A stretch of 64,000 nt of DNA from Ranitomeya imitator (taxonomy: Eukaryota), in the NCBI RefSeq assembly GCF_032444005.1, contig NC_091289.1, forward strand, positions 90,210,001-90,274,000. The letters run 5' to 3'. The translations under genes were made by a program, and so were the position numbers. Below, piece by piece: positions 2,875 through 64,000 of the stretch (position 1 is its first letter; every line of letters starts with the position of its first letter). The notes under the pieces are model-generated. The model was given only the letters and a program-made list of their open reading frames with translations, was not told where the DNA came from and did not search any database.

Positions 2875-2994
2875 ACACTACAGGAATCTCAGCAACATCT
2901 GACGAATAAGCTGAACAGTGCTCATGAGCTAACAAGCAACCAAGAATGCGTATTGCAGAGCTTGAGGGATACCCTTCAGAGTAGAGACCATGAG
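2875..2994 (+). CDS. PDE4DIP: PDE4DIP/myomegalin coding exon (TLQESQQHLTNKLNSAHELTSNQECVLQSLRDTLQSRDHE)
   Basis: tttctttaatgcag| acceptor and |gtaggt donor; 120 nt, open, phase 0-0. Resembles the recalled human segment ILQEKLNEMSYELKCAQESSQKQDGTIQNLKETLKSRERE and joins in frame to the next exon. Confidence 0.85.
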
Positions 2995-15915: not shown

Positions 15916-16008
15916 GTTATGGAACTATATCAAATAGTAGACGAACACAATTCTACTATTGCTAAATTACAGGATGTGCTATTAAAGAGTCAAAATGAAC
16001 AGCTACAA
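15916..16008 (+). CDS. PDE4DIP: PDE4DIP/myomegalin coding exon (VMELYQIVDEHNSTIAKLQDVLLKSQNEQLQ)
   Basis: cattttcttgtag| acceptor and |gtaagt donor; 93 nt, phase 0-0. Resembles recalled human TEELYQVIEGQNDTMAKLREMLHQSQLGQLH. Confidence 0.9.
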
Positions 16009-17075
16009 GTAAGTAATGCTAAAGGACTGCCACCAAGCGTGTAACACAATCCTGACTTCCTATACTGCCAAGCATTGATCAGCAGCCATAACCTATTGAG
16101 TAAGTTCTGGGATGGTCCCTGAAATATCCTATCATAAAGCAGAGCAACTATAGTAAATCCCCTGTGGTCACCATCAGCAAACTGCAACCCACTACGTATC
16201 TTAAGTTGAAATAAAAATCACCAGCCACAAATTGATACAACAATCACCAATATATTGACTCTGACATAGCACTTTGAAAATAGGAGAACCTGAGTCTTCA
16301 TATATTAAAAGATAGCATTTATTAATAAAAAAATGAGATAAGTACTCAATACAATAAATAAAAAAATTCTATAAATATTGCGTATGTATGGATAAAAGTG
16401 TGATCCTCAAAAGTGACAAAAAATTGAAAGAAAAAAGAAAAAAACAGACAGAGATGCTTACCTGTCTAACTGGACCTCAATACAATTTGCACGTTATATT
16501 TTTATCGGGGTGCAGTTGGGCCCAAATGGTTCTGTAAACTGTGGCCTCTGTTCACACAGGATGCATTATAGTTATCACTGGGCAGCCCGCCATAGGGCGT
16601 CATTAATAGGCTGAGAACAAGATGCTCTGCAATCCTTGTGTGAACATTGCCAATCCCTGATTGATAGCTGGCTCTCATTTGGTATTATTGCACCTGTGCA
16701 GTTGCCATTTTACTTGGGTCCACTGCACCCTGTTATTGCAATTGTATTGAGGCCCAGTTAGGCAAGTAAGCATCTCTGCCTGTTTTTTCCTTTTTTTGTG
16801 GTTTTCATGACAACAAATTGAGTAGCTGCAGACCCGGATCGAAATGGTGCAGCACCAGGGATAATATCCTAGTAGGTATAAATATACAGCCACATATAGT
16901 GAGGGAAATCAAGTGAGGAAACTCTAATCAAAACATGTGGCTAAAATAGGCTGAAAGCAGCCATAAAGTAAGTTATACTGAAGTGCTGCACCAAAAACAC
17001 AGAGCTTGAAATAGATCAGGGGTCAATTACCTATAGTGATGATCTCTCCGGTCTAGTTCAGGGAGCGGCCACTCA

Positions 17076-17120: not shown

Positions 17121-17512
17121 GCGTGGTCTCATTTGCATAGACGTTGGTCACAAATACATGGTCGTTCCAGTCACATGACCAAGAACTGACCAATTGCATC
17201 TTTTGCCTTCACGTATGTGCAGACGTCACTCCCAGGTCCTGTAGCACAAACTCCATGCCGCCCCAGCCAGGAGCAGCGGCCAGCGCCTACCTGCATAGCC
17301 CCCAACAGGAACAGAGCACCATGGAGAACGCACAGGAACCAGGGACATGACCAAAACACAAGCGGAAAAACAATTACAATAAAGGTAAAATAAACAAGTG
17401 TTGAAAAAGTGAACATTTGTATATATATTAAAATATAATTAATTGCGGGGACATATAAGTGACAATTTGTGAAAAAATACAATGTGCACATAAATATCAA
17501 AAATTACAAATA

Positions 17513-22256: not shown

Positions 22257-23875
22257 CAGTACAGACCAAAAGTTTGGACACACCTTCTCATTTAATGATT
22301 TTTCTGTATTTTCATGACTATGAAAATTGTAAATTCACACTGAAGGCATCAAAACTATGAATTAATACATGTGGAATTACATACTTAACAAAAAAGTGTG
22401 AAACAACTGAAATTATGTCTTATATTCTAGGTTCTTCAAAGTAGCCACCTTTTGCTTTGATTACTGCTTTGCACACTCTTGGCATTCTCTCGATGAGCTT
22501 CAAGAGGTAGTCACCGAGAATGGTCTTCCAACAACCTTGAAGGAGTTCCCAGAGATGCTTAGCACTTGTTGGTCCTTTTGCCTTCACTCTGCGGTCCAGC
22601 TCACCCCAAACCATCTCGATGAGTTTCAGTTCTGGTGACTGCGGAGGCCAGGTCATCTGGCGTAGCACCCCATCACCCTCCTTCTTGGTCAAATAGCCCT
22701 TTCACAGCCTGGAGGTGTGTTTGGGGTCATTGTCCTGTTTAAAAAATAAATGATGGTCTAACTAAACACAAACCGGATGGAATAGCATGCCACTGCAAGA
22801 TGATGTGGTAGCCATGTTGGTTCAGTATGCCTTCAATTTTGAATAAATCCCCAACAGTGTCTCCAGCAAAGCACCCCCACACCATCACACCTCCTCCTCC
22901 ATGCTTCACGGTGGGAACCCGGCATGTAGAGTCCATCCGTTCACCTTTTCTGCATCGCACAAAGAGACGGTGGTTGGAACCAAAGATCTCAAATTTGGAC
23001 TCATCAGACCAAAGCACAGATTTCCACTGGTCTAATGTCCATTCCTTGTGTTCTTTAGCCCAAACAAATCTCTTCTGCTTGTTGCCTGTCCTTTGCAGTG
23101 GTTTCCTAGCAGCTATTTTACCATGAAGGCCTGCTGCACAAAGTCTCCTCTTAACAGTTGTTGTAGAGATGTGTCTGCTGCTAGAACTCTGTGTGGCATT
23201 GACCTGGTATCTAATGGGTGCTGCTGTTAACCTGCGATTTCTGAGGCTGGTGACTCGGATAAACTTATCCTCAGAAGCAGAGGTGACTCTTGGTCTTCCT
23301 TTCCGGGGCGGTCCTCATGTGAGCCAGTTTCTTTGTAGCGCTTGATGGTTTTTGCTACTGCACTTGGGGACACTTTCCCCATTTTTCGTACTGACTGACC
23401 TTCATTTCTTAAAGTAATGATGGCCACTCGTTTTTCTTTACTTAGCTACTTTTTTCTTGCCATAATACAAATTCTAACAGTCTATTCAGTAGGACTATCA
23501 GCTGTGTATCCACCAGACTTCTCCACAACACAACTGATGGTACCAACCCTATTTATAAGGCAAGAAATCCCTCTTATTAAACCTGACAGGGCACACCTGT
23601 GAAGTGAAAACCATTCCCTGTGACTACCTCTTGAAGCTCATCAAGAGAATGCCGAGAGTGTGCAAAGCAGTCATCAAAGCAAAAGGTGGCTACTTTGAAG
23701 AACCTAGAATATAAGACATGTTTCAGTTGTTTCACACTTTTTTGTTAATTATATAATTCCACATGTGTTAATTCATAGTTTTGATGCCTTCAGTGTGAAT
23801 GTACAATTACATAGTCATGAAACTACAGAAAAATCTTTAAATCAGAGGGTGTGTCCAAACTTTTGGTCTGTACTG
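22257..23875 (-). mobile_element. Full-length degenerate Tc1 element
   Basis: TA|CAGTACAGACCAAAAGTTTGGACAC ... GTGTCCAAACTTTTGGTCTGTACTG|TA with about 200-bp TIRs; DDE motifs WSDESKFE, QDND, WPPQSPELKLIEMVW. Confidence 0.92.
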
Positions 23876-28958: not shown

Positions 28959-29092
28959 TTAAAGTTATGGGCATGGATACAAATCCCATCTGTGCCATAT
29001 TATGGCTGTTATGTTTGTGGCAGGAAAAGGATGGATTGTTATTCTTGATTCTGTATAAAGTCTATCATCAGAGACTGTGTTGTGTTTTCCAG

Positions 29093-29296
29093 ACTTTCCC
29101 AGTAATGCCAACCCAGCTCCAGTTTTTAGACCTGCAGAACACATTATTCTCTACTCAGATGGAACTTCAGAAAACGCAAATGGCTCTCCGACAAAAGGAA
29201 CGTCAGCTAACTGAGGCTAAAAGATCGCAGAGGTTACTGGAGGTTGATATCCTAGAAGGACAGGAGCAGAAAGAAACTACATGGAAACACAATCAG
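29093..29296 (+). CDS. PDE4DIP: PDE4DIP/myomegalin coding exon (TFPVMPTQLQFLDLQNTLFSTQMELQKTQMALRQKERQLTEAK...KETTWKHNQ)
   Basis: gtgttttccag| acceptor and |gtgctg donor; 204 nt, phase 0-0. Matches recalled human LLDLQSALFCSQLEIQKLQRVVRQKERQLADAK...KEASWKHNQ. Confidence 0.93.
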
Positions 29297-29574
29297 GTGC
29301 TGCCTTCTTCTTGTCTTTCTGTATTATGTGAATTCAGGGCGCACACAGCATATTGTGGCTACTGTCGGTTGTGTGCACTTATAAGATGGACATTTGACAG
29401 ATGTGTACCAGCCAGATGAAAACCAAAAGAACACTACTCTTGCCTCTGTCTTGTAATTGGGGCCTTTGGAAAGGTTTAGGTATACTGCAGTAGCATTCCC
29501 AGTATGTAAGTGCAGCTAAGTGCACAGTCCCAGTATCACGGGTATCTCTACCTGTTGTACACTGCATGTAGTTA

Positions 29575-37170: not shown

Positions 37171-38949
37171 GCAGACACTGAAGCTTTGGAGCAGACCTCT
37201 GAATCCCAGGCCATAGTATGAGGAAACAACTCTGCAGACGACCCCACCCACCTGGAATTGACGATGGCAATGTCATGTAAAACTCAGCAAGGGGACTAAA
37301 TAAGAGTCTCCATTTTTTTCCAAAAATTCGGCCACAGATACCACTTAAGTGGCATCAATTTCGCCAGAGTTTTTTTAAAATGGTTGGTGATGTGATTTTC
37401 AAAAATCATCAAGCTTTTAGTCTCCCCAAGATGACACAGGAGTAGAAAAGTCCTTGCGGATCCAGGATTTGTTCATCTTGATGAATGTTAGTCTGTCTAC
37501 ATTATCACTGGACAGCCGCGTGCGTTTATCTGTCAGCACACCACCAGCAGCGCTGAACATCCGTTCAGAGAGAACGCTGGCTGCGGGTCACGACAAGATG
37601 TCCAAGGCGTGAGTGGCGAGCTCAGGCCATTTTTCAAGATTGGAAGCCCAAAATGAGCAAGGGTCCAGTTCCATAGTCATGGAATACATAGTAACATAGT
37701 AGCATAGTTAGTAAGGCCGAAAAAAGACATTTGTCCATCCAGTTCAGCCTATATTCCATCATAATAAATCCCCAGATCTACGTCCTTCTACAGAACCTAA
37801 TAATTGTATGATACAATATTGTTCTGCTCCAGGAAGACATCCAGGCCTCTCTTGAACCCCTCGACTGAGTTCGCCATCACCAACTCCTCAGGCAAGCAAT
37901 TCCAGATTCTCACTGCCCTAACAGTAAAGAATCCTCTTCTGTGTTGGTGGAAAAACCTTCTCTCCTCCAGATGCAAAGAATGCCCCCTTGTGCCCGTCAC
38001 CTTCCTTGGTATAAACAGATCCTCAGCGAGATATTTGTATTGTCCCTTTATATACTTATACATGGTTATTAGATCGCCCCTCAGTCGTCTTTTTTTCTAG
38101 ACTAAATAATCCTAATTTCGCTAATCTATCTGGGTATTGTAGATCTCCCATCCCCTTTATTAATTTTGTTGCCCTCCTTTGTACTCTCTCTAGTTCCATT
38201 ATATCCTTCCTGAGCACCGGTGCCCAAAACTGGACACAGTACTCCATGTGCGGTCTAACTAGGGATTTGTACAAAGGCAGTATAATGCTCTCATCATGTG
38301 TATCCAGACCTCTTTTAACCCCTTCAAGACCCAGCCTATTTTGACCTTAAAGACCTTGCCGTTTTTTGCAATTCTGACCAGTGTCCCTTTATGAGGTAAT
38401 AACTCAGGAACGCTTCAACGGATCCTAGCGGTTCTGAGATTGTTTTTTCGTGACATATTGGGCTTCATGTTAGTGGTAAATTTAGGTCAATAAATTCTGC
38501 ATTTATTTGTGATAAACACGGAAATTTGGCGAAAATTTTGAAAATTTCGCAATTTTCACATTTTGAATTTTTATTCTGTTAAACCAGAGAGATATGTGAC
38601 ACAAAATAGTTAATAAATAACATTTCCCACATGTTTACTTTACATCAGCACAATTTTGGAAACAAAATTTTTTTTTGTTAGGAAGTTATAAGGGTTAAAA
38701 TTCGACCAGCGATTTGTCATTTTTACAACGAAATTTACAAAACCATTTTTTTTAGGGACCACCTCACATTTGAAGTCAGTTTGAGGGGTCTATATGGCTG
38801 AAAATACCCAAAAGTGACACCATTCTAAAAACTGCACCCCTCAAGGTACTCAAAACCACATTCAAGAAGTTTATTAACCCTTCAGGTGCTTCACAGCAGC
38901 AGAAGCAACATGGAAGGAAAAAATGAACATTTAACTTTTTAGTCACAAA

Positions 38950-42724: not shown

Positions 42725-42974
42725 NNNNNNNNNNNNNNNNNNNNNNNNNNNNNNNNNNNNNNNNNNNNNNNNNNNNNNNNNNNNNNNNNNNNNNNNNNNN
42801 NNNNNNNNNNNNNNNNNNNNNNNNNNNNNNNNNNNNNNNNNNNNNNNNNNNNNNNNNNNNNNNNNNNNNNNNNNNNNNNNNNNNNNNNNNNNNNNNNNNN
42901 NNNNNNNNNNNNNNNNNNNNNNNNNNNNNNNNNNNNNNNNNNNNNNNNNNNNNNNNNNNNNNNNNNNNNNNNNN
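42725..42974. other. Assembly gap (250 N)
   Basis: Run of N. Confidence 1.
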
Positions 42975-49639: not shown

Positions 49640-49786
49640 GAGTTACATGGAGCATTACACAAACTTCAGAGAGAATTGCAGGAGAAGAGTGAGCATCTTA
49701 AGAACCTTGAAGAAGAGAAATGTACTAAGGAGCACAACATCGATAGCCTGAAGCAAACTGTATCCCAGAAAGAACAAATACTGCAA
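49640..49786 (+). CDS. PDE4DIP: PDE4DIP/myomegalin coding exon (ELHGALHKLQRELQEKSEHLKNLEEEKCTKEHNIDSLKQTVSQKEQILQ)
   Basis: gttgtttggcag| acceptor and |gtgagt donor; 147 nt, phase 0-0. Continues WKHNQ|EL as in recalled human ELRKALQQLQEELQNKSQQL...LSHKEQLLQ. Confidence 0.92.
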
Positions 49787-49875
49787 GTGAGTAAATTTAT
49801 GTCTCATGAATATTCAGAACTCGCGTAAAGATGTAAAGTATATTTCCTTAAGTCAATATGCATCGCAGCTATATA

Positions 49876-51463
49876 CAGTACAGACCAAAAGTTTTACACA
49901 CACCTGCTCATTTAAAGATTTTTCTGTATTTTCATGACTATGAAAATTGTACATTCACACTGAAGGCATCAAAACTATGAATTAACACATGTGGAATTAT
50001 ATACTTAACAAAAAAGTGTGAAACAACTGAAAATATGTCTTATATTCTAGGTTCTTCAAAGTAGCCACCTTTTGCTTTGATGACTGCTTTGCACACTCTT
50101 GGCATTCTCTTGATGAGCTTCAAGAGGTAGTCACAGGGAATGGTTTTCACTTCACAGGTGTGCCCTGTCAGGTTTAATAAGTGGGATTTCTTGCCTTATA
50201 AATGGGGTTGGGACCATCACTTGTGTTGTGCAGAAGTCTGGTGGATACACAGCTGAGAGTCCTACTGAATAGACTGTTAGAATTTGTTTTATGGCAAGAA
50301 AAAAAGCAGCTAAGTAAAGAAAAACGAGTGGCCATCATTACTTTAAGAAATTAACGTCAGTCAGTCCGACAAATTGGGAAAACTTTGAAAGTGTCCCCAA
50401 GTGCAGTGGCAAGAACCATCAAGCGCTACAAAGAAACTGGCTCACATGAGGACCGCCCCAGGAAAGGAAGACCAAGAGTCGCCTCTGCTTCTGAGGATAA
50501 GTTTATCCGAGTCATCAGCCTCAGAAATCAACAGCTCAGATTAGAGACAAGGTCAATGCCACACAGAGTTCTAGCAGCAGACACATCTCTACAACAACTG
50601 TTAAGAGGAGACTTTGTGCAGCAGGCCTTCATGGTAAAATAGCTGCTAGGAAACCACTGCTAATGAAAGGCAACAAGCAGAAGAGACTTGTTTGGGCTAA
50701 AGAACACAAGGAATGGACATTAGACCAGTGGAAATCTGTGCTTTGGTCTGATGAGTACAAATTTGAGATCTTTGGTTCCAACCACCATGTCTTTGTGCAA
50801 CGCAGAAAAGGTGAACGGATGGACTCCACATGCCTGGTTCCCACCATGAAGCATGAAGGAGGAGGTGTGGTGGTGCTTTGCTGGTGACACTGTTGGGGAT
50901 TTATTCAAAATTGAATGCATACTGAACCAGCATGGCTACCACAGCATCTTGCAGCGGCATGCTATTCCATCCGGTTTGCATTTAGTTGGACCATCATTTA
51001 TTTTTCAACAGGACAATGACCCCAAACACACCTCCAGGCTGTGTAAGGGCTATTCGACCAAGAAGGAGAGTGATGGGGTGCTACGCCAGATGACCTGGCC
51101 TTCACAGTCACCAGACCTGAACCCAATCGAGATGGTTTGGGGTGAGCTGGACCGCAGAGTGAAGGCAAAAGGGCCAACAAGTGCTAAGAATCTCTGACCA
51201 TTCCCGGTGATTACCTATTGAAGCTCATCAAGAGAATACCAAGAGTGTTCAAAGCAGTCATCAAAGCAAAAGGTGGCTACTTTGATGAACCTAGAATATA
51301 AGACATATTTTCAATTGCTTCACACTTTTTTGTTAAGTATATAATTGCACATGTGTTAATTCATAGTTTTGATGCCTTCAGTGTGAATTTACAATTTTTA
51401 TAGTCATGAAAGTACAGAAAAATCTTTAAATGAGGTGTGTCCAAACTTTTGGTCTGTACCGTG
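49876..51463 (+). mobile_element. Full-length degenerate Tc1 element, same family as 22257-23875 but opposite orientation
   Basis: TA|CAGTACAGACCAAAAG TIR; [33 protein letters not shown]. Confidence 0.92.
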
Positions 51464-51763
51464 TATATATAATATATTAAAAGTAAAAATGTAAAAAAAT
51501 TGTAAATATGTTAAGAAAATCACATAATACAAATATACTGTAACCATAAATAAGTATTTTTATGTAAAAAAAACAAAACAAATCAAAAGTACACACCCAA
51601 CCTATAAAAACTGTCACACTAGTTAACTATTCAATGAACACTGTAAAAAAAAATTAAATAAAAAAAGCACAAAACAAAGCTTTATCATCATACTGCATAA
51701 CAAAAACTGGAATAAAACGCAATCAAAAAGGGAAATGTAAATAAAAATGGTACCTCTGAAAAC

Positions 51764-51876
51764 AGGTTCTGTAGAAGGACGTAGATCTGGGGATTTATTA
51801 TGATGGAATATAGGCTGAACTGGATGGACAAATGTCTTTTTTCGGCCTTACTAACTATGTTACTATGTTACTATGT
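51764..51876 (+). mobile_element. CR1 3'-end stub with (TATGTTAC)n tail
   Basis: Reverse complement of 37690-37800. Confidence 0.85.
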
Positions 51877-53008
51877 AACATCATCTTGTCCCACAAAAAA
51901 ACAAGCCTCCATACAGCTCCATCAGTTGAAAAATAAAAAAGTTATTGCTCTCAGAATACAGCAATGCAAAAAATAATTCTTTTTTCTATAAAATAGTTTT
52001 TGTGTAAGAGTGCCAAAACAATAAAAATATAAATGTGATATCTCTACCAAAAGTAGTTTTTGGCCACACATCGGGGCTCTGCTAATGTGACATGGCCCCT
52101 TCAAACCATTCCAGCAAAATCTGAACTCCCTTTTGAGCTTTGCACTGTGCCTCAAATGTTGTTTTCAGTCACATATGGGGTATCTGCTTACTCAGTAGAA
52201 ATTGAAAAACAAACTTTAGAGTGTAGTTTCTCCTGTTATCCTTGTGCAAATGAGAACATTTAGAGCTAAAACAACATTTTTGTGGGAAAAATAAATTTCT
52301 TTAATTTTCACAGTTTAACATTGTAAAATTCTCTGAAGGACCTGTTAGTTCAATGTGCTCACCAAACATCTAGATGAGTTCCATGAGGGGGTCTACTTTC
52401 CACTTTTCGAGGGTCTCCACTGTTTAGGCTCATCAGAGGTTCTGCAAATGCAACATGGCATCTGCCATCTTGTCCTGCCATTTTTGTTTTCAAAAAGTCA
52501 AACAGTGCTGTTTTCTTTCCGAGCACTGCTATGCACCCAAACAGTAGTTTTCCCCCACATATGGCGTATTGGCATATGGAAATTGCACAACAGATTGTGG
52601 GTTCTATTTTTTCCTGTTACTGTTGTGAAAACAAAATTTGTGGCTAAAGTTAAAATTTTAGTGAAAAAAAGGTAAATATTCATTTTTTTCCCCTTCACAT
52701 TGCTTAATTCTTGTGAAGCACCTGAAGGGTTAAAAAAAACTTATTGGCTGTTTTGAGCAGTTTGTGGGGTGCATTTTTTAGAATGGTGTCATTTTTAGGT
52801 ATTTTCTGTCCTATAGGCCCTCAAAGTCAATTCAAATGTGATTTGGTCCCAATAAAAAAATTTTTTGTAAATTTTTGTTGGAAAAACTAGAAATCGCTGA
52901 TCAACTTTTAACCCTTATAATTTCGTAATAGCAAAACTAATACAAAATGGTGCAGATGTAAAGACATGTGGGAAACGTTATATTTTGTGGCCTAAATCTC
53001 TGGTTTAA

Positions 53009-54215
53009 CCCCTCACAACATGCACCATACATGTACTACTCATGTCGGGTCTCTCCCTTTGATGGGGGTTCTGGCGCTAAGCCCACATCTTTCCCCACAC
53101 ATGTCAGCTGATTTAATTAGCTAATATGTGCCCCTAACAGCCGTGGGTGGAATCGCAATCCACCCGCAGCTGTTAACCTGTCAATTGCCACTGTCTATCT
53201 CTGACAGGGGCATTTAATGTGGTTGCGCCGGAAGCGCGTCACTAATCCTGCCCATCGGCGCCTATGTCACATGACCGTGGGTCGCCGATGGGTTGGCATG
53301 ACAACCCGGAGTCTGCAGCAGACCCCTGTGGTTCGACGCTCAAAGCAAGTGAGCATTTCTGCTACATAGAGTTGGGCTACAGCCCTGTTCTATGTAGCAT
53401 AAACGATCGGATGATTGTAGGTTCTATTCTCCCATGGAGACTATTGAAAAAAGTGAAAAGAAAAAATTGTTTTTAAAAATAGTAAAAAAAATAAAAAATA
53501 AAGTTTAAATCACCCCCCATTCACCTCATTCAAAATAAAAATATATATACATATTTGTTATCCCCGCTTTCAGAATTGCCCGATCTATCGATACATAAAA
53601 ATAATTAATCCGATCAGTGAATGGCTTAGTGAGGAAAAAGTAGTTACACCAGAATTACGTTTTTTTGGTCTCTGCAACATTGCATTAAAATGCAAACGGG
53701 CAATCAAAAGATTGTATCTACACCAAAATGGTAGCAAGAAAAACATCAGTTCGGCACACAAAAAGTAAGCCCTCACCCAGCCCCAGATCACAAAAAATGG
53801 AGACGCTATGGGTCTCAGAAAATTACGCAAAGTTGTATATATTTTTTTAACAAACTTTTTTTTACCATTTAAATTAAAAAGAAAGCCTATTCATGTTTGG
53901 TATCTATAAAATCGTAATAACCTGGAGAATCCTAATGGCAGGTCAGTTTTAGCAATTGGTGAACATAGTAAAAAAAAAACCCTTGTGGAATTGCTCTTTT
54001 TTTTTTTGCAATTTAACCGCACTTGATTTTTTTCCCCATTTTCCAGTACACTATATGGTAAAACCAATAAGATTATTCAAAAGTACAAATTGTCATGCAA
54101 AAAACAAGCCATCAGATGGTCATATTGACGGAAAAGTAAAAAAGTTATGGCTCTGGGAAGCAGGGGAGCAAAAATCAGAAATGCAAAAATGAAAAATGGC
54201 CCGGGTGTGAAAGGC
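53009..54215. mobile_element. Non-autonomous piggyBac-like element nested in a related decayed element
   Basis: TTAA|CCCCTCACAAC start; the right part matches 1-532. The flanks (about 52000-53004 and 54220-54420) resemble 38330-39500 in reverse. Confidence 0.5.
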
Positions 54216-55102
54216 ATAACAATTCAGTTTTGAAAATTGCTAAATTTTCACCAAGTTTGCAATATTTTCACGAATAAGCAAAAGGCATATCAAAGAAATT
54301 AACACTATAATGAAGTACAACGTCATTAAAAACAACCTCACTGGGATCCGTAGAAGCGTTTCAGAGTTATTACCACTGGTCAGAATTGTAATATATGGCC
54401 TGGTCATGAAGGTGAAAACAGGCATTCTATATTCTGATATTCTGTGGATGTTTTGTGCATATCCTTCTCTTTTCTTGTAATCCCAGACTCGTTGATGATG
54501 AGATCAGTGCACTGTGGGGACCATATAATCACTTCTAGGACTCCTTGTTCTTCTGTATGCTGAATCTAGTTCTTATAATGAAATAATATAATAAATACAC
54601 CGGCGCTCCGAATGATAGTGGGTGTAGGAGTAAAGGGAAGCTGCAGGTGCCTAGACGGCTACTGCGCCAAGCCTGTCATGTATATGCAGAGGAGTAAAAC
54701 TAAAAGTTAGGCCACCGCGCTACCTATCTCCTAGATAATAAATATAATGAACTAAAAAGTACCCACAAAAGGGTTAACATAAAGCACTTACTGAGTGGTT
54801 AAAGTGCCAGGACTTGGACTGCGGAAGCTTGATGGAGCGCTGAAGTGATGAAGACAGACGCTCCTCCGTGAGTCCGAGGTGAGTCCGAGGTACGGAGGTC
54901 CGGACGGCAGCGTGAAGCGACAGGCCCGAGGGGAGCGTCCTCCCTATTGGCGCCTGGCTTCCACGCGCACGCCGAGAAAGTAGACAAGCGGCGTCCTGGC
55001 CAGGGGCGCCGCTACACTGCGACAGGGAATAGGGGGGCGTGGTCTGGGTGACGTCACCCGGAGCTACAAGAAAATGGAGCAGGAGACAAGTGCCAAACAG
55101 GG

Positions 55103-55158
55103 CCTCTATTGCCTACGCGTTTCGAAGGTCACCGGACCTTCTTCGTCAGGGCTAGAGG
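55103..55158 (-). ncRNA. Type I hammerhead ribozyme (intact cleavage triplet GUA) in the inverted pseudo-LTR
   Basis: Minus strand CCUCUAGCC-CUGACGA-A-GAAGGUC-CGGU-GACCUUC-GAAA-CGC-GUA-GGCAAUAGAGG; stems I and II pair, and stem III is the palindrome ACGCGU. Confidence 0.88.
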
Positions 55159-55916
55159 TCCCTGGCTGTCTGCTGCTCTATATAGGATATAAAAGCGCCG
55201 CCCACTATACAAAAAACTAAATGCATGTATGTGCATGAGAGTGTCGCTAGGCTACAGGAAGTCCATGGACCTGATGGCATACCTCAGAATAATAGGTGAT
55301 CTATGTTACTATGTACAAATGTTAAAAAATTTTTATTGTTAAATAAATACATTAAAAAATACATTAAGAAATCTATATTTGAGAGGGACAATTATTATAA
55401 AAATATATAAAAGAAGAAGGGGGGAATTTTTATATATAATTTGTTAAAAAAGGGGGGGGAAGAGAAAAAAACAAGAATACTGATAAAAAGTCATACTTAA
55501 GCCAGGCGCCAATAGGGAGGACGCTCCCCTCGGGCCTGTCGCTTCACGCTGCCGTCCGGACCTCCGTACCTCGGACTCACCTCGGACTCACGGAGGAGCG
55601 TCTGTCTTCATCACTTCAGCGCTCCATCAAGCTTCCGCAGTCCAAGTCCTGGCACTTTAACCACTCAGTAAGTGCTTTATGTTAACCCTTTTGTGGGTAC
55701 TTTTTAGTTCATTATATTTATTATCTAGGAGATAGGTAGCGCGGTGGCCTAACTTTTAGTTTTACTCCTCTGCATATACATGACAGGCTTGGCGCAGTAG
55801 CCGTCTAGGCACCTGCAGCTTCCCTTTACTCCTACACCCACTATCATTCGGAGCGCCGGTGTATTTTATATTATTTCTTTTAGCTCTTTCTGTGCACATA
55901 CACCTAGGCAGCTTCA

Positions 55917-57923
55917 ATGGCGTTTAGGGCATTGAGACATGATAGGGATTATCGTTTAACCCTTGTTAATAAACAATTTTCTTTTAACATTTCCCCTCCC
56001 CCTATGGATGAACAAGCATTATTGAAAACATTAGAGAAACTTTTAATTACGGAAATGAGGGACATATGGGAGGTGGCCACACTTGAGAAATATGTACAGA
56101 CTAACATTATTCCGAAGGGATTAGTGATTTATAAATCCCTAGCAGGGGACTTCGGGGACCCCCAAATACAGCAAGACTGGGATGATATGTTCAATAATTT
56201 TTCAAAGCAAACTTTGCAATTTATCATAGACAAACGGAGGATAAAATTGAATCATACGAGCCAACAAATTATTGCGCTTTTTGAACAGCTCGATGAATAT
56301 GAAAACTTGGCTGACTTCCAAACTCTCACTGATAGCATACTGATCAGATTAAAAGAAAAAGAGAAAGAAATCATAGCCAAAAAAGTGAGGAAATTTCACA
56401 GAGATAGGGTGCCTAATGCACTCTCTGATAATATGGCGTACTGCCGAGAAACGCATTCGCCTTCTGCTAGTATACATCAAGCTTCTATGGACCTCGTAGT
56501 CCTAGATGAATACAATGAAACTCCAACACACAATACGCTAGATCGTTCGGAAATTTTTTCAACTTATACTAACACAAATTCCACCCAGTATACACCTGTT
56601 TCCATTGGTAATAGGAATCAGGTTAATATTAGACCGTCTGTTAATTCAGTAGCAGCCAACGTATCATTTGATTTTAGTACCCACGAACATTCAGGGCCAT
56701 CATTAGAACTACAAGAGTCTCCTATTGCTTCCACCTCCAACTATTATGCCCCACTATCTCTAATTGATGATACGGATGACACCTTTAGGAGCAATGAATT
56801 ACCTGGATCAAGCCAGAGCGCAAGTATGGCACCTAATCTAGGAACCCATAATGGCTATTCAGATAAAAATAAAAGATTGATGGAAGTAAAATATGGCACT
56901 AATACCCCCATTACTCAAAAACGACAACAAAAAAGACCAGAAGGGGTTACTAATAATAATAATAAAATTAAAAATAACCCCAAAAAAATCTCCAGCCTTA
57001 TACCAAACAGAGGTAGAGGATTTAAAACACAGACTAAAATCACTTGGGATTTTTTTCGGTCACATACTCTAAAACCAAAAGAAGTAGGAGGGGGGGGGGG
57101 GAAACTCTCCAAAAAGAAAATAAAGAATTCCCTCCCCTCCACCCAAAAAATATTTAACCTGAGTTCGCATGTACTTTCGGATAACGAAAAGTCCCTCTTA
57201 CAAAAGGGCCTGAAATTCGCACCAACCACAACAGCAAAACCTTTTAACCTTTTCATCAGTATGAAGCAGTTTTTGCGCAATTTGGCCATTAAGAAATATT
57301 TCCTCAAAAAAGCACCACAAGTCCCTAATCCTGTTTCTCATGAGTACATACAGACTTCGCTATCTAATCCCTCTACATTTCATCCCGTACAAGAATACTC
57401 AAATGCCTTTCGGTCTTTTGAAACTGCGGTCACACAGGATATTAGGAAAATGAGGAGAAAGAATCCCAAATATATATCCCAAAATTTAAATAACTTTGAA
57501 CGGAAGGCACTACTGGACCTTCAAGTAAACCATGATATTATTATACGTCCAGCGGATAAAGGGGGTGGGATTGTTATCCTCAATAAAACCACATATCAGG
57601 AGGAATCTGATAGACTCCTGAATGATGAGACTACCTATAGGAAATTAAATAGTGACCCTACTGAACGGTATACCAAAAATTTGAATATTTTAATATCACG
57701 AGGTAAATCTTCAGGTATTGTAAATAAAAAAGAATCTTTATTCATCATGAACAAAACCCCCAGTGTGGCAGTGTTCTACTACCTCCCTAAAGTCCATAAA
57801 GATGCAATGCGCCCACCTGGGAGGCCTATTATTTCGGGGATCAATTGCCTGACAGCTAATCTGTCACGCTACATAGACACACACCTCCAAAAAATGCATG
57901 CCTATTATCCCCGCATATCTTAA
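55917..57923 (+). CDS. Penelope ORF, 5' part (N-terminal domain and start of RT)
   Basis: IFNLSSHVLSDNEKSLLQKGLKFAPT, IIIRPADKGGGIVIL, FYYLPKVHK..RPPGRPIISG are PLE hallmarks. The frame is lost at the A6 run 57889-57894. Confidence 0.92.
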   Translation: MAFRALRHDRDYRLTLVNKQFSFNISPPPMDEQALLKTLEKLLITEMRDIWEVATLEKYVQTNIIPKGLVIYKSLAGDFGDPQIQQDWDDMFNNFSKQTLQFIIDKRRIKLNHTSQQIIALFEQLDEYENLADFQTLTDSILIRLKEKEKEIIAKKVRKFHRDRVPNALSDNMAYCRETHSPSASIHQASMDLVVLDEYNETPTHNTLDRSEIFSTYTNTNSTQYTPVSIGNRNQVNIRPSVNSVAANVSFDFSTHEHSGPSLELQESPIASTSNYYAPLSLIDDTDDTFRSNELPGSSQSASMAPNLGTHNGYSDKNKRLMEVKYGTNTPITQKRQQKRPEGVTNNNNKIKNNPKKISSLIPNRGRGFKTQTKITWDFFRSHTLKPKEVGGGGGKLSKKKIKNSLPSTQKIFNLSSHVLSDNEKSLLQKGLKFAPTTTAKPFNLFISMKQFLRNLAIKKYFLKKAPQVPNPVSHEYIQTSLSNPSTFHPVQEYSNAFRSFETAVTQDIRKMRRKNPKYISQNLNNFERKALLDLQVNHDIIIRPADKGGGIVILNKTTYQEESDRLLNDETTYRKLNSDPTERYTKNLNILISRGKSSGIVNKKESLFIMNKTPSVAVFYYLPKVHKDAMRPPGRPIISGINCLTANLSRYIDTHLQKMHAYYPRIS

Positions 57924-59433
57924 AGATACTAGTCAAGTGCTCCAAATATTGGAAAAAATCGAATGGGAAAGTGGCTTCACACTGGGGACATTAGACATAA
58001 AATCTCTGTATACAGTAATAGACCATTCAAAAGGATGTGAAGCGGCAGAACACTACCTTAATAAACTGGCCACCCACAAGAAACCACAGATCCAGTTCAT
58101 TGTGGAAAGTATTTTATTTATTTTGGAACATAATTATTTCACCCATGATGGCCAATTTTACCTCCAAACACGGGGCACGGCTATGGGCACTTGTTTCGCT
58201 CCCAGCTACGCAAACATCTATGTAGCCAAGTGGGAGGAGCTACATATTTCGCTCACAAAAAGCCCCAATACTGGCTTGATTATGTGGAGGCGTTTTATCG
58301 ATGATATACTATTCATCTGGAATGGCCCCCAAAGAGAATTAGATGTATTTATTGCCAATCTCAATTCTAATGACTTTGGGTTGGAATTTACGGCCACTAC
58401 CAGCAAATCGGAAATACATTTTTTAGACCTAAACATCTTTATTGAAAATAATCGGATACTAACTAAATGCCACCATAAACCAGTAGACTCTAATGGATTT
58501 ATTGATATTAATAGCTGTCATCTACCGATTTGGTTGACTAATATCCCCAAAAGCCAATTTACCCGGGTAAGACGTAATTGCACTAAAAAACGAGACTATA
58601 TAATAGAAGCAGAACAACTTACCAAGAAATTTCTGGAAAAAGGATACCCCAAAGACCTACTAGATGTGGCTAAACAGGAGGTCTATGAAACATCGAGGGA
58701 TACCCTAGTACAGAGAACAACTAGGGATAAATTTACTCCAACTGATATCCCTACACAAATTCATCAGTTACCTATTATTACGCAGTTCCATTATGGATAC
58801 AAACAGTTTACTAAAATCATCTATAAACACTGGTCAATCCTCCAGACGGACAAAGTAATAGGGGAACTGCTACCAAAACGACCCAAATTTGTTTTTAGAA
58901 AATCACAAACAATAGGTAACATTATAGCTCCAACTACCAACAAGGGTCCTGCCAAGAGTATATCCTCAAAAAATCCAGGCTTTGTACCTTGCGGCACTTG
59001 TTCCTGTTGTGTGCGTACAAATTTTAAAAAAATAAAACAGCTTAAATTTTTTAACTCTAACGCCACTGAGGAATTTACTATTAAAGACCAAATTTCATGC
59101 TGGTCGTCAGGAGTTATTTACTTAATCAAATGCCCCTGTGGTAAAATTTACGTGGGTCGCACTAAACGTAAATTGAGGGACCGCTTGAAAGAACATTTTA
59201 ATAATATAGAAAAAGGCTTCATTGGCCACCCCCTTTCCAGGCATTTTAGGGAATACCACGGTAGATCCACTAAGGGATTAATATTTTGCGGCATCCAAGT
59301 AGTTCCAAAAAACTGGAGGGGAGGGGACTACATAAAACTAATGTCACGCACCGAATCTAGGTGGATTTTTATGCTGGATAGCCTGGCCCCTAAGGGTCTT
59401 AATCATGAATTGGAGCTTTATGCTTTTAAATAG
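57898..59433 (+). CDS. Penelope ORF, 3' part (RT core, CxxCxxC linker, GIY-YIG endonuclease)
   Basis: LDIKSLYT, QTRGTAMGTCFAPSYAN, WRRFIDD, FLDL, CGTCSCC, GVIYLIKCPCGKIYVGRT, HPLSRHF, ESRWIFMLDSLAPKGLN. Confidence 0.95.
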   Translation: MPIIPAYLKDTSQVLQILEKIEWESGFTLGTLDIKSLYTVIDHSKGCEAAEHYLNKLATHKKPQIQFIVESILFILEHNYFTHDGQFYLQTRGTAMGTCFAPSYANIYVAKWEELHISLTKSPNTGLIMWRRFIDDILFIWNGPQRELDVFIANLNSNDFGLEFTATTSKSEIHFLDLNIFIENNRILTKCHHKPVDSNGFIDINSCHLPIWLTNIPKSQFTRVRRNCTKKRDYIIEAEQLTKKFLEKGYPKDLLDVAKQEVYETSRDTLVQRTTRDKFTPTDIPTQIHQLPIITQFHYGYKQFTKIIYKHWSILQTDKVIGELLPKRPKFVFRKSQTIGNIIAPTTNKGPAKSISSKNPGFVPCGTCSCCVRTNFKKIKQLKFFNSNATEEFTIKDQISCWSSGVIYLIKCPCGKIYVGRTKRKLRDRLKEHFNNIEKGFIGHPLSRHFREYHGRSTKGLIFCGIQVVPKNWRGGDYIKLMSRTESRWIFMLDSLAPKGLNHELELYAFK

Positions 59434-59781
59434 TTATCTACTTAAGTATGACTTTTTATCAGTATTCTTGTTTTTTTCTCTCCCCCCCCCCTTTTTTAAC
59501 AAATTATATATAAAAATTCCCCCCTTCTTCTTTTATATATTTTTATAATAATTGTCCCTCTCAAATATAGATTTCTTAATGTATTTTTTAATGTATTTAT
59601 TTAACAAAAATTTTTTAACATTTGTACATAGTAACATAGATCACCTATTATTCTGAGGTATGCCATCAGGTCCATGGACTTCCTGTAGCCTAGCGACACT
59701 CTCATGCACATACATGCATTTAGTTTTTTGTATAGTGGGCGGCGCTTTTATATCCTATATAGAGCAGCAGACAGCCAGGGA

Positions 59782-59837
59782 CCTCTAGCCCTGACGAAGA
59801 AGGTCCGGTGACCTTCGAAACGCGCAGGCAATAGAGG
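59782..59837 (+). ncRNA. Type I hammerhead ribozyme with mutated cleavage triplet (GCA) in the 3' pseudo-LTR
   Basis: Identical to the other copy except T->C at 59825 (U16.1). Confidence 0.82.
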
Positions 59838-60979
59838 CCCTGTTCGGCACTTGTCTCCTGCTCCATTTTCTTGTAGCTCCGGGTGACGTCACCCAGACCA
59901 CGCCCCCCTATTCCCTGTCGCAGTGTAGCGGCGCCCCTGGCCAGGACGCCGCTTGTCTACTTTCTCGGCGTGCGCGTGGCAGCCAGGCGCCAATAGGGAG
60001 GACGCTCCCCTCGGGCCTGTCGCTTCACGCTGCCGTCCGGACCTCCGTACCTCGGACTCACCTCGGACTCACGGAGGAGCGTCTGTCTTCATCACTTCAG
60101 CGCTCCATCAAGCTTCCGCAGTCCAAGTCCTGGCACTTTAACCACTCAGTAAGTGCTTTATGTTAACCCTTTTGTGGGTACTTTTTAGTTCATTATATTT
60201 ATTATCTAGGAGATAGGTAGCGCGGTGGCCTAACTTTTAGTTTTAGTTCTTATAATGATCTACTAGTGTTTTTGTACTGCTGCAAAATAAATTTGGAGCC
60301 ATTGGTATGCCTGCCTCTTGGTACTGCTTGATGGAGAAGTTAAACATCAAGGGATTTTTCATATAGAATAAACATATTTGTGGATCACTACTTAATACAT
60401 ATGATTACATAAACATAAGGTGCTTATAAACCAATGAATATATTAACCGCTTCCCGACCACCGGCGGTAGATATACGTCAGTGCTTGCAGGGATTTGTGC
60501 AGTGCTGACACTTATACCTAATAACTCGGGGTTTACAGTACAGAACGCTGGCTGTGACCATAGACCTCGTCAATTTCTGATTGGTTCAGGTCCTGGTGAT
60601 GTCATCCCAACAATCATTGGGAAAGTTTGTGGTAGGAGCAACCTTTTCTGGTTGATCTGCTTCATAAAAATTCTGTTTCTCCTCTGATCTTCTGTCAGCG
60701 AGAGATCAGAGGAGAAACATTTTGACAAGTGCTGCTGACAACAGCTGTGTCAGTCAGCAATCTTGTTATAAAGTAAAAAAAAAAACACATACAAAGCAAT
60801 AGCTTAGTGTTAGGCTTAAAGTTAGGGTTGGGCTTGATCGCAATTGTTTTACCAATAATTTGATTGTAGTCATGTCAGTTAGTTCGTTAATTATATAGTA
60901 TACTGTAGGTAACTATACATAATTTGATAGAAACTTCGTTTGCACTAAAATATAACAAATACTCTTGAGTTTTCTATTG

Positions 60980-62004
60980 CCATATATACTCGTGTATAAG
61001 CTAAGTTTTTCGGCACATACACGAGTCATTATCCCAGAAAGACAGGGGCCAGCGGCTGCGGCTAAAGCCTGTGCCCGCGGCTAACGAAAAATGAATATTC
61101 ACTGCGCTGGCAGGGACTATTCATTTCTCTTATGGCGCACAGTTACAGCCACAGCCGCTGGCTTCCAGCACACATCCTACTTATCCTCCCTGCGCACCCT
61201 TGCTGCATCTCGTTCCGGTGCCAGCAGCTCGTCCAGCCAATCGATCAGGCCTCCTGCTCATGAAGGTAATGAATATTCACCTCTCTCCACTCTCATAGGC
61301 TTGAAGTGAATATTCATTACCTTAATGAGCGGGAACACGTTATCGCTCGGCCAGAAGAGCTGCTGGCACGGAACGAGATGCAGCAAGGGAGCGCAGGGAA
61401 GATAAATAGAATGTTTTTTTTGTTGTTTTTTTTTTATAGGAACCATGCATAAGAGGACAGGGATGGGGAGCCATGCATACAAAGATAGGGGATAAGGAGC
61501 TATACATACAGGGATGGAGAGCCATGCATTCAAGGACAGGGAGCCATGCATGCAAGGACATGGATGGGGAGGCAAGCATGCAAGGATAGGGGATAAGGAG
61601 CTATACATACAGAGATGGAGAGCCATACATGCAAGGACAGTGATAGGGAGCCATGCATACAAGGACAGGGATGGGGAGCCATGCATGCAAGGACAGGGTT
61701 GGGGAGCCATGCATTCAAGGATAGGGGATAAGGAGCTATATATACAGGGACGGAGAGCCATGCATACAAGGACAGAGACAGGGAGCCATGCATGCATGCA
61801 AGGGCAGGGATGGGGAGCCATGCATACAAGGATAGGGAGCCATGCATGCAAGGACAGGGATGGGGAGCAATTCTTACAAGGATAGGGATGGGGGGACAAT
61901 GCATACCCAGCTTATACTCAAGTCAATAAGTTTTCCCAGTTTTTTGTGGCAAAATTAGGTGCCTCGGCTGATACTTTGGTCAATTTATACACGAGTATAT
62001 AGGG
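60980..62004. mobile_element. MITE related to the CCGTATATACTCGAG family, with a different internal satellite (61440-61900, GCCATGCATACAAGGACAGGGATGGGGA)
   Basis: Ends CATATATACTCGTGTATAAGC / TTTATACACGAGTATATAG, plus the same subterminal CCCAGTTTTTTGTGGCAAAATTAGG. Confidence 0.7.
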
Positions 62005-62026
62005 TAATTCCGGAAACAATATTTAA

Positions 62027-64000
62027 CCCCTTCCCGACCCATGACGCCACGTAGGCGTCATGAAAGTCGGTGCCATTCTGACCCATGACGCCTATGCGGC
62101 GTCATGGAAAGATCGCGTCCCTGCAGATCGGGTGAAAGGGTTAACTCCCATTTCACCCGATCTGCAGGGACAGGGGGAGTGGTAGTTTAGCCCAGGGGGG
62201 GTGGCTTCACCCCCTCGTGGCTACGATCGCTCTGATTGGCTGTTGAAAGTGAAACTGCCAATCAGAGCGATTTGTAATATTTCACCCATTATAACGGGTG
62301 AAATATTACAATCCAGCCATGGCCGATGCTGAAATATCATCGGCCATGGCTGGAAATACTAGTGTGCCCCCACCCCACCCCTCCGATCGCCCCCCCACCC
62401 CCCCGATCTGGCCGGTACACTGCTCCGGCTCCCCTCCGCCCTGTGCTCCGCTCCCCCCCGTGCTCGTGTCCGCTCCCCCCGTGCTCCAATCACCCCCCCG
62501 TGCTCCAATCACCCCCCCTGCACTCCGATCCACCCCCCCCCCGTGCTCCGTTCCACCCCCCCGTGCTCCATTCCAGCCCCCCGTGCTCCATTCCAGCCCC
62601 CCCGTGCTCCGTTCCACGCCCCCCGTGCTCCGTTCCACCCCCCCGTGCTCCGTTCCACCCCCCCGTGCTCCATTCCAGCCCCCCCCGTGCTCCGTTCCAC
62701 GCCCCCCGCGCTCCGTTCCACCCCTCCCGCGCTCCGATTCCCCCCGCCCGTGCTCCGATCCCCCGCCCCCCGTGGTCCCTCCCCACCCTATCATACTTAC
62801 CGATCCAGCCGTGGTCCCGTCCGTCTTCTCCCGGGCGCCGCCATCTTCCAAAATGGCGGGCGCATGCGCAGTGCGCCCGCCGAATCTGCCGGCCGGCAGA
62901 TTCGTTCCAAAGTGCATTTTGATCACTGAGATATAATCTATCTCAGTGATCAAAATAAAAAAAATAATAAATGACCCCCCCCCCCCCTTTGTCACCCCCA
63001 TAGGTAGGGACAATAAAAAAATAAAGAAATTTTTTTTTTTCCACTAATGTTAGAATAGGGTTAGGGGTAGGGTTAGGGTTAGGGCTAGGGTTAGGGCTAG
63101 GGTTAGGGTTAGGAATGTGCACACGTATTCTGGTCCTCTGCGGATTTTTCCGCTGCGGATTTGATAAATCCGCAGTGCTAAACCGCTGCGGATTTATGGC
63201 GGATTTACCGCGTTTTTTTCTGCGCATTTCACTGCGGTTTTACAATTGCGATTTTCTATTGGAGCAGTTGTAAAACCGCTGCGGAATCCGCACAAAGAAG
63301 TGACATGCTGCGGAATGTAAACCGCTGCGTTTCCGTGCAGTTTTTCCGCAGCATGTGTACAGCGATTTTTGTTTCCCATAGGTTTACATTGAACTGTACA
63401 CTCATGGGAAACTGCTGCGGATCCGCAGCGTTTTCCGCAGCGTGTGCACATACCTTTAGAATTAGGCTATGTGCACACGGTGCGGATTTGGCTGCGGATT
63501 CGCAGCAGTGTTCCATCAGGTTTACAGTACCATGTAAACATATGAAAAACCAAATCCGCTGTGCCCATGGTGCGGAAAATACCGCGCGGGAACGCTGCGT
63601 TGTATTTTCCGCAGCATGTCAATTCTTTGTGCGGATTCCGCAGCGTTTTACACCTGTTCCTCAATAGGAATCCGCAGGTGAAATCCGCACAAAAAACACT
63701 GGAAATCCGCGGAAAATCCGCAGGTAAAACACAGTGCCTTTTACCCGCAGATTTTTCAAAAATGGTGCGGAAATATCTCACACGAATCCGCAACGTGGGC
63801 ACATAGCCTTAGGGTTAGGGTTGGAATTAGGGTTGTGGTTAGGGTTAGGGGTGTGTTGGGGTTAGTGTTGTGGTTAGGGGTGTGTTGGGGTTAGGGTTGT
63901 GATTAGGATTATGGCTACAGTTGGGATTAGGGTTAGGGGTGTGTTGGGGTTAGTGTTGGAGTTAGAATTGAGGGGTTACCACTGTTTAGGCACATCAGGG
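62027..64000. mobile_element. Second copy (inverted, runs off the window) of the 38319-43887 piggyBac-like element
   Basis: TTAA|CCCCTTCCCGACCCATGACGCC; reverse complement of about 41870-43887. Confidence 0.92.
63056..63113 (+). repeat. Interstitial telomeric (TTAGGG/CTAGGG)n tract
   Basis: About nine hexamers: TTAGGG GTAGGG TTAGGG TTAGGG CTAGGG TTAGGG CTAGGG TTAGGG TTAGG. Confidence 0.92.

What the first reader, a model, noticed from the sequence alone, without database searches (positions are those of the whole stretch)
55103..59837. Twin hammerhead ribozymes in a young Penelope element: only the copy in the host pre-mRNA sense is catalytically mutated
Seen: two near-identical 56-nt type I hammerheads, at 55103-55158 (-) and 59782-59837 (+). 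Each has a CUGACGA/GAAA core, a 7-bp stem II, a 9-bp bulged stem I and a palindromic ACGCGU stem III. The + copy has T->C at 59825, turning GUA into GCA and breaking A15.1-U16.1. Established: PLE pseudo-LTRs carry minimal hammerheads thought to act as dimers via the palindromic stem III; U16.1 is essentially required; an extra A between A9 and G10.1 (also present here) is tolerated in the CChMVd viroid hammerhead. Inference: the element sits in sense orientation in a PDE4DIP intron, so the + copy would cut the host pre-mRNA. One of the very few differences between the arms falls on this nucleotide, which hints at selection defusing a ribozyme in a host intron.
Basis: partly seen in the sequence, partly recalled or inferred. 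Interest (0 to 1): 0.82.

Follow-up and report, generated by a model that had tools for sequence, protein, structure and literature searches.

The report
Penelope retrotransposon with one mutated hammerhead
A young Penelope-like retrotransposon in an intron of a poison frog's myomegalin (PDE4DIP) gene carries the usual minimal hammerhead motif on both inverted arms, and the single base change in the gene-sense copy looks like an ordinary chance mutation, not evidence that the host disarmed a ribozyme.

Summary
Two 56-nt type I minimal hammerhead motifs lie at 55103-55158 (-) and 59782-59837 (+). They are identical except for T/C at 59825, which is position 16.1 (GUA versus GCA). They belong to one Penelope-like (PLE) insertion: an inverted 5'-truncated copy joined to a partial-tandem copy with an RT/GIY-YIG reading frame, flanked by a 13-15-bp target-site duplication.

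The host claim also holds. Four colinear myomegalin exons lie on the + strand upstream, so the + motif is sense to the pre-mRNA.

New here: every public-run contig laid on 59825 reads T, in two frog species. GUA is therefore the family state and C is private to this copy, or an assembly error.

The selection story is not supported:
- It rests on one site. The nominal chance is 1.4-4%, and several such hits are expected among the family's hundreds of copies.
- Published PLE min-hammerheads show no detectable cleavage as single motifs.
- The window has no second sense copy to form a dimer.
- In the pre-mRNA the arm can pair with its roughly 808-nt inverted twin.

The extra A after A9 is a class feature, not an oddity. 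The scan already has many notes on hammerhead/Penelope insertions in this genome. This is an ordinary member of a known kind.

The parts
54567..54581 (.). Left copy of the target-site duplication TAGTTCTTATAATGA
   Evidence: Read directly. The same 15-mer stands at 60244-60258. The first 2 nt overlap possible element sequence, so the duplication is 13-15 bp.
54582..55499 (-). Inverted, 5'-truncated PLE copy (3' UTR/pLTR part only, no ORF). Its 3' end faces outward to the left.
   Evidence: Inverted repeats I1-I4. Alignment A1 shows identity to 59441-60245 except for 3 substitutions and 2 small indels. blastn gives 99.0% over 808 nt.
55103..55158 (-). Minimal type I hammerhead motif with an intact core (GUA cleavage triplet), antisense to the host gene
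   Evidence: Structure elements checked.
55500..60245 (+). Partial-tandem, near-full-length PLE copy, sense to the host gene
   Evidence: Direct repeat D4. The junction with the inverted copy lies at ~55499-55501. The right end lies at the target-site duplication.
55500..55764 (+). 5' pLTR fragment that duplicates 59981-60245. It starts downstream of the hammerhead, so this copy carries only one sense hammerhead.
   Evidence: blastn 100% over 265 nt. D4.
55917..57923 (+). Upstream open reading frame (668 aa) with no significant Pfam or PDB match. It overlaps the next ORF in another frame.
57898..59433 (+). Downstream open reading frame (511 aa) with reverse-transcriptase and GIY-YIG endonuclease domains. 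The RT match starts at profile position 72, so the RT appears split between the two frames.
   Evidence: Pfam GIY-YIG 27.3 bits (above cut-off) and RVT_1 22 bits (below cut-off). 91 homologues, mostly frog RT/GIY-YIG proteins, best E 8e-143.
59782..59837 (+). Hammerhead motif with C at position 16.1 (GCA), sense to the host pre-mRNA
59825..59825 (+). The private T-to-C difference (U16.1C)
   Evidence: Alignment A1. All contigs of 4 public runs read T here: 17, 16, 1 and 2 contigs.
60244..60258 (.). Right copy of the target-site duplication
2875..2994 (+). Myomegalin (PDE4DIP) exon, AG/GT-bounded
   Evidence: tblastn with frog myomegalins. Splice sites read.
15916..16011 (+). Myomegalin exon (approximate bounds taken from tblastn)
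29087..29302 (+). Myomegalin exon (approximate bounds taken from tblastn)
   Evidence: up to 86% identity over 72 aa.
49640..49786 (+). Myomegalin exon (49 codons), the last one upstream of the element. It matches residues ~567-620 of the 2473-aa Xenopus tropicalis protein.
   Evidence: Splice sites read. phmmer hits are named myomegalin. tblastn.

Best explanation
This is one recent insertion of a Penelope-like retrotransposon into an intron of the poison frog's myomegalin (PDE4DIP) gene. It has the standard PLE layout: a 5'-truncated inverted copy joined head-to-head to a partial-tandem copy, with both 3' ends facing outward, bounded by a 13-15-bp target-site duplication. Each 3' region carries the family's minimal hammerhead motif: a long helix II, an unpaired base after A9, and a palindromic mini helix III that needs a second copy to build the active form. 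The two arms have since picked up, or were born with, three substitutions and two small indels. One of these, private to the + arm, changes U16.1 to C and should weaken or abolish that motif's catalytic potential. The most likely cause is a neutral point mutation or a reverse-transcription error with no consequence for the host. A lone minimal hammerhead is practically inactive, it has no sense partner nearby, and in the pre-mRNA it can be tied up in a long duplex with the inverted arm. Shown here: the anatomy, the host gene and strand, and the polarity of the change. Inferred: neutrality, the inactivity of the monomer (from literature on other PLE hammerheads), and the duplex formation.
For: Anatomy: repeats and alignment, target-site duplication, RT/GIY-YIG frame. 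Host: four colinear + strand myomegalin exons. Polarity: all contigs of runs X1-X4, from two organisms, read T at 59825. No variant rows appear at 59845 or 59980, so the other two substitutions are derived in the left arm; one of them is CpG to TpG. Chance: 1.4% per substitution and 4% for any of three; 2-12 comparable hits are expected in a family of about 150-440 copy equivalents, where flank depth is 9 against 1400-4000 in the arm, a rough figure. Mechanism: single min-HHRs show no detectable self-cleavage and dimers are slow (PMC4209133; PMC6765202). In the Anolis PLE, ribozyme cleavage is protein-assisted and not needed for insertion in vitro, and no RNA-seq ends map to the cut site (PMC11167929). 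No other sense-strand motif or pLTR piece lies in the 64-kb window. Dual min-HHRs on opposite strands a few hundred bases apart are already described.
Against: The single derived substitution in the sense arm does land on one of the most conserved bases of the motif, which is a nominal 1.4% event. No other variant at 5% share or more appears inside the motif among family contigs, so the motif is well conserved in the family. A 2026 preprint reports that hammerhead-bearing retrozymes are depleted from Xenopus introns, so some selection against genic copies exists in general. No activity was measured for this sequence; its 6-nt palindrome and 9-bp stem I might make it more active than the tested Schistosoma and Drosophila motifs.
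Confidence: 0.8

Rival explanations
1. Host-level selection favoured the U16.1C allele because an active sense-strand hammerhead would cleave the myomegalin pre-mRNA.
For: The + copy is sense to the gene. C is derived and private. 16.1 mutants are at least 10-fold less active. The change also stabilises the competing non-catalytic fold by 2 kcal/mol. Retrozymes are depleted in Xenopus introns.
Against: It rests on one site in one element, picked out after the fact. Several such hits are expected by chance in the family. Single PLE min-HHRs show no detectable cleavage and no sense partner lies within 54 kb upstream or 4 kb downstream. The inverted arm can sequester the motif in an ~808-bp duplex. 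Unchecked notes from this scan list apparently intact sense-strand intronic hammerheads in other genes of the same genome. Intron depletion is common to most transposons and is not ribozyme-specific.
Confidence: 0.05
2. The C at 59825 is an assembly or consensus error, or a heterozygous or rare allele, not a fixed difference.
For: None of the 36 contigs covering the site in four runs shows C. This includes runs X1/X2, which carry the element's unique 3' flank without differences (record 8).
Against: Logan contigs drop rare variants. A single-copy C path at depth ~9 next to a T path at depth ~4000 is expected to be lost, so its absence says little (notes). The site is not in a homopolymer, and the neighbouring arm differences show that the assembler kept the arms apart.
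Confidence: 0.1
3. The T-to-C change was favoured, or tolerated, for a reason unrelated to catalysis, such as loss of a weak cryptic 5' splice-site-like GUAGG in the sense transcript.
For: The sequence itself: CGCG|GUAGGC becomes CGCGCAGGC on the sense strand.
Against: The GUAGG site has a poor exonic side and no supporting data. This is another after-the-fact story for one site.
Confidence: 0.02

Closest known systems
Minimal hammerhead ribozymes (min-HHRs) in the pLTRs of metazoan Penelope-like elements (Cervera and de la Pena 2014, PMC4209133)
   Same: Type I topology, helix II of 7-8 bp, an unpaired nucleotide between A9 and G10.1, a conserved G10.1-C11.1 pair, palindromic 15.2-16.2 with almost no helix III, and a location in the repeat flanking an RT/GIY-YIG ORF. 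Copies on opposite strands a few hundred bases to kilobases apart are described. The motifs are reported in amphibians (about 9,000 in Xenopus tropicalis).
   Different: Helix I here is long (9 bp with an AA bulge) against the 4-5 bp quoted for Schistosoma families. This copy set comes from a poison frog. One of the two copies has C at 16.1.
Dimer-dependent hammerheads (newt satellite 2, avocado sunblotch viroid; Forster et al. 1988, as cited in PMC4209133 and PMC6765202; Lunse et al. 2017 for PLEs, cited in PMC6765202)
   Same: An unstable helix III with a palindromic loop, so the active form is built from two motifs.
   Different: Those RNAs arise from tandem multimers that place two sense motifs on one transcript. 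Here each strand carries a single motif.
CChMVd hammerhead with an extra A between A9 and G10.1 (De la Pena and Flores 2001, as cited in PMC4209133)
   Same: An extra unpaired nucleotide at the same core position.
   Different: It is a viroid type III hammerhead and is not related by descent. In PLEs the extra base is the rule, so no special explanation is needed.
Animal non-LTR retrozymes (Cervera and de la Pena 2020, PMC7229834; Li, Clavereau and Pollet 2026 preprint)
   Same: The same hammerhead class and the same inverted/tandem insertion style. The hammerhead-core bin here is about 5-8 times deeper in contig depth than the rest of the arm, which suggests the core is shared with other abundant repeats.
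   Different: Retrozymes are short and non-coding. This element carries the RT/GIY-YIG frame.
Poseidon PAc element of Anolis carolinensis (PMC11167929)
   Same: A PLE with an RT/GIY-YIG ORF, a partial-tandem structure and a hammerhead.
   Different: In PAc the hammerhead overlaps the start codon. Here it lies about 350 nt downstream of the stop codon, in the 3' region.

Membership tests
Hammerhead ribozyme (type I) | Conserved core C3 U4 G5 A6 N7 G8 A9 / G12 A13 A14 / A15.1-U16.1 / H17 | tested here: met
   Fully met by the - copy at 55103-55158. The + copy fails at one position, C16.1 at 59825.
Hammerhead ribozyme (type I) | Three helices around the core, with helix I open | tested here: inconclusive
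   Helix I (9 bp with a bulge) and helix II (7 bp) are present. In a monomer, helix III is only the A15.1-U16.1 pair closing CGCG; a 6-bp helix III needs a second copy. The minimum-energy monomer fold is a different structure.
Hammerhead ribozyme (type I) | Match to a curated Rfam hammerhead covariance model | tested here: not met
   No hammerhead family is listed at gathering score or at E<=10 on 6-kb or 141-nt slices. This is expected for min-HHRs, which lack a helix III hairpin and carry an inserted base.
Hammerhead ribozyme (type I) | Site-specific self-cleavage after H17 | not testable with these tools
   Only contigs were available, not raw RNA reads, so no RNA ends could be seen.
PLE min-HHR class (Cervera and de la Pena 2014) | [quoted passage not shown] | tested here: met
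   Extra A, G-C closing pair, ACGCGU palindrome and 7-bp helix II.
Penelope-like element | A single coding region with a reverse transcriptase followed by a GIY-YIG endonuclease | tested here: met
   Pfam GIY-YIG is above its cut-off; RVT_1 is below its cut-off. There are 91 homologues with RT, GIY-YIG, DUF8422 and HTH_animal domains in frogs. The frame is interrupted near 57.9 kb.
Penelope-like element | Pseudo-LTRs from partial tandem structure, often with an inverted 5'-truncated copy, and a variable target-site duplication | tested here: met
   D4 and I1-I4, alignment A1, 13-15-bp duplication.
Neptune clade of PLEs (named in another first-stage note) | Phylogenetic placement of the RT among reference PLE clades | not tested
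   No reference clade sequences were available. The homologues found carry no clade names.

The most novel reading that the evidence does not exclude
The U16.1C allele rose because an intact sense-strand hammerhead, perhaps activated in trans by abundant family transcripts or by the element's own protein, lowers myomegalin expression. On this reading, host introns would act as a filter that preferentially retains catalytically dead sense copies.
Probability: 0.04. Interest if true: 0.55.

Novelty: new member of a known kind. Interest (0 to 1): 0.15.

Why it matters
As it stands, this is a clean, well-bounded example of a young Penelope-like insertion with its minimal hammerheads in an amphibian gene. 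It is useful as an annotation and as a test substrate, since a natural GUA/GCA pair sits in otherwise identical arms. It is not a discovery. The general question it raises, whether sense-strand ribozymes in introns are selected against, is real. It can be tested genome-wide in this repeat-rich genome, but a single site cannot answer it.

Tried and rejected
- Rfam scans of the whole window, the 6-kb region and two 141-nt slices found no hammerhead family, so formal model membership could not be shown.
- Both sequencing-run searches returned only Logan contigs, with no raw reads and no run on record as RNA. RNA ends at the cleavage site, strand, and the single-copy C allele could therefore not be examined. 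The one read-laying run gave the family state but not this locus's allele.
- PDB sequence searches with both ORFs found nothing.
- I tried to fetch DNA around related PLE proteins to compare their hammerheads. The two poison-frog genome records were too large to serve. Two ENA contigs of 38-39%-identical relatives (L001, L002) contain no hammerhead under a strict or a loose descriptor and no pLTR similarity. No cross-family covariation test was possible.
- A look-up of earlier notes by sequence was blank, and the words PDE4DIP and myomegalin are in no note.
- The subfamily-variant explanation (GCA inherited from a source copy) is rejected, because no contig carries C.
- A CpG-deamination explanation for 59825 is rejected, because neither strand places the change in a CpG context. 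It does fit the left-arm change opposite 59845.
Full report
**1. Observation**

Reading the two sites confirms the motif CCUCUAGCC-CUGACGA-A-GAAGGUC-CGGU-GACCUUC-GAAA-CGCG-(U/C)-A-GGCAAUAGAGG at 55103-55158 (- strand) and 59782-59837 (+ strand).

- In hammerhead numbering this gives C3-A9, one inserted A, a 7-bp helix II closed by G10.1-C11.1, G12A13A14, A15.1, the palindrome ACGCGU, H17 = A, and a 9-bp helix I with an AA bulge.
- These pairs are all standard and evaluate to -19.8 kcal/mol.
- The single difference inside the motif is T (left) versus C (right) at 59825, which is position 16.1.
- A 34-nt core pattern occurs exactly twice, against zero expected. The copies are not independent, because they sit inside long inverted arms.

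Two caveats apply. No Rfam hammerhead model matches at gathering score or at E<=10, even on 141-nt slices. The predicted minimum-energy monomer fold pairs core bases with the 16.1-17 region and is not the catalytic shape.

**2. What the thing is**

Repeat analysis, the arm alignment and blastn show one composite insertion.

- 54582-55499 is an inverted, 5'-truncated copy of the element's 3' region.
- 55500-60245 is a + strand copy. Its first 265 nt repeat its last 265 nt (59981-60245), which is a partial tandem, or pseudo-LTR.
- The whole is flanked by TAGTTCTTATAATGA at 54567-54581 and 60244-60258. The duplication is 13-15 bp, because 2 nt are ambiguous with the element's end.
- The + copy has two long overlapping open frames, 55917-57923 and 57898-59433, in different frames.
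- The second frame has GIY-YIG (above the Pfam cut-off) and RVT_1 (below the cut-off, starting at profile position 72).
- It has 91 homologues, mainly frog proteins with RT, GIY-YIG, DUF8422 and HTH_animal domains. The best is 52% identical, from Ranitomeya imitator.

This is the standard architecture of a Penelope-like element. The 5' pseudo-LTR fragment begins downstream of the hammerhead, so each strand of the locus carries exactly one motif.

**3. Host gene and orientation**

- A coiled-coil-like, AG/GT-bounded exon at 49640-49786 (+) was searched against 1.8 billion representatives.
- All six hits at E<=0.001 were full-length proteins, and the five looked up are named myomegalin in frogs.
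- tblastn of these proteins on the window finds four colinear + strand exons at about 2875-2994, 15916-16011, 29087-29302 and 49640-49786. They cover residues ~428-620 of the 2473-aa Xenopus tropicalis protein.
- No later exon lies in 49787-64000, so the next one is beyond the window.

The element therefore lies in the following intron, with the + copy in the sense of the pre-mRNA. That the gene continues downstream is inferred from the orthologues.

**4. Polarity and rarity of the change**

Contigs of four public runs were laid on 59441-60400 at 90% likeness or more.

- At 59825 every covering contig reads T: 17 in X1, 16 in X2, 1 in X3 and 2 in X4. X4 is a different organism label.
- T (GUA) is thus the family and ancestral state. 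C is private to this copy, or an error.
- At the two other substitutions between the arms (59845 and 59980) no variant row appears. The right arm therefore has the family state there, and the left arm carries two derived changes, one of them CpG to TpG.
- Contig depth is about 9 on the unique flank, 1400-2500 along the arm, about 4000 at 59825 and about 11,300 over the hammerhead core bin. As a rough guide only (the tool warns that depth is not copy number), this points to hundreds of family copies and a core shared with other repeats.
- No other variant at 5% share or more lies within the motif, while the downstream pseudo-LTR shows about one variable site per 15 nt.
- The C allele itself could not be confirmed. 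A single-copy path beside a path about 400 times deeper is expected to be dropped from contigs.

**5. Does the difference indicate selection?**

With one derived substitution in ~808 nt of the sense arm, the chance of hitting one of 11 invariant core bases is 1.4%. For any of the three substitutions in either arm it is 4%. At this divergence, a family of 150-440 copies is expected to contain 2-12 copies with such a hit. This locus was also noticed because of the hit.

The mechanistic premise is weak as well.

- Single PLE min-hammerheads show no detectable self-cleavage in vitro, and dimeric or trimeric constructs cleave poorly (PMC4209133; review PMC6765202).
- In the Anolis PLE, cleavage was protein-assisted and dispensable for insertion in vitro, and it left no RNA-seq ends (PMC11167929).
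- The window has no second sense-strand motif or pseudo-LTR piece that could supply a dimer partner on the pre-mRNA.
- In that transcript the sense arm is preceded, about 4 kb upstream, by its near-perfect ~808-nt complement, which can hold it in a duplex (inference).
- Unchecked notes of this scan list other sense-strand intronic hammerhead motifs in this genome. These are leads only.

In favour of some effect:

- Mutants at 15.1/16.1 are at least 10-fold less active (PMC3088659).
- The C variant stabilises the competing fold by 2 kcal/mol.
- Retrozymes are reported to be depleted from Xenopus introns (preprint). That depletion is neither orientation-specific nor ribozyme-specific.

**6. Comparison with what is known**

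- the long helix II;
- the G10.1-C11.1 pair;
- the palindromic mini helix III;
- copies on opposite strands.

These motifs are reported in thousands of copies in Xenopus. The longer helix I is the only modest departure.

**7. Verdict**

The change is shown to be derived and private. The selection reading is an over-interpretation of a single neutral-looking substitution, a reverse-transcription error or, less likely, an assembly error. The locus is an ordinary new member of a known kind.

Earlier follow-ups in this scan reached the same 'known kind' verdict for related hammerhead and Penelope insertions elsewhere in this genome.

Noticed in passing
window 17078-17116 (-), with flanks 17040-17130: A second, unrelated hammerhead-like motif: UUGAAGA core (U at position 3), an extra A, a 4-bp helix II, GAAA, then CUCGCGUC, with a helix I-like pairing CCACGCCCC/GGGGUGAGUGG. 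It shows no similarity to the Penelope arm beyond a short GACCACGCCCCC string. It is probably a decayed motif of another hammerhead-bearing repeat family.
   Followed up: partly
window 59793-59824: Summed contig depth over the hammerhead core bin (about 11,300 in X1) is 5-8 times that of the neighbouring pseudo-LTR bins and about 1200 times the unique flank. The exact 32-mer core seems to be shared by far more repeats than this Penelope family, possibly retrozyme-like non-coding elements.
   Followed up: no
window 57898-57923: The two long frames of the element overlap here in different reading frames, and the RT domain appears to be split across them. I did not analyse the nature of the interruption.
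   Followed up: no
window 11223-12807 (+) and 62298-63013 (both strands): Stretches open in several frames at once and G+C/C-rich (GC 0.50-0.55). At 62454-62747 there is a ~20-21-nt C-rich tandem array (CCCCCCGTGCTCCRTTCCA-type units), and at 61408-61906 a ~79-101-nt repeat array. These are satellite-like sequences just downstream of the element.
   Followed up: no
window 15004-15441 (-), 38059-38346 (-); 13846-13989 (+), 22423-22701 (-), 23230-23445 (-), 50355-50639 (+): Open segments whose translations look, by my own reading, like LINE reverse-transcriptase C-terminal regions (two near-identical pieces) and Tc1/mariner-type transposase fragments. The myomegalin introns are packed with other transposon remnants.
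   Followed up: no
window 42725-42974: A run of 250 N (a gap or masked stretch).
   Followed up: no
run X3, contig record 17 laid on 59492-60245: A 1661-nt contig at depth 57, from a small run of unstated type, covers the arm with T at 59825 and an 18-nt insertion after 59678. Beyond 60245 it continues into the sequence that follows the pseudo-LTR inside the element (as at 55765 onward). It is therefore another, tandem-type family copy, or possibly a transcript.
   Followed up: no
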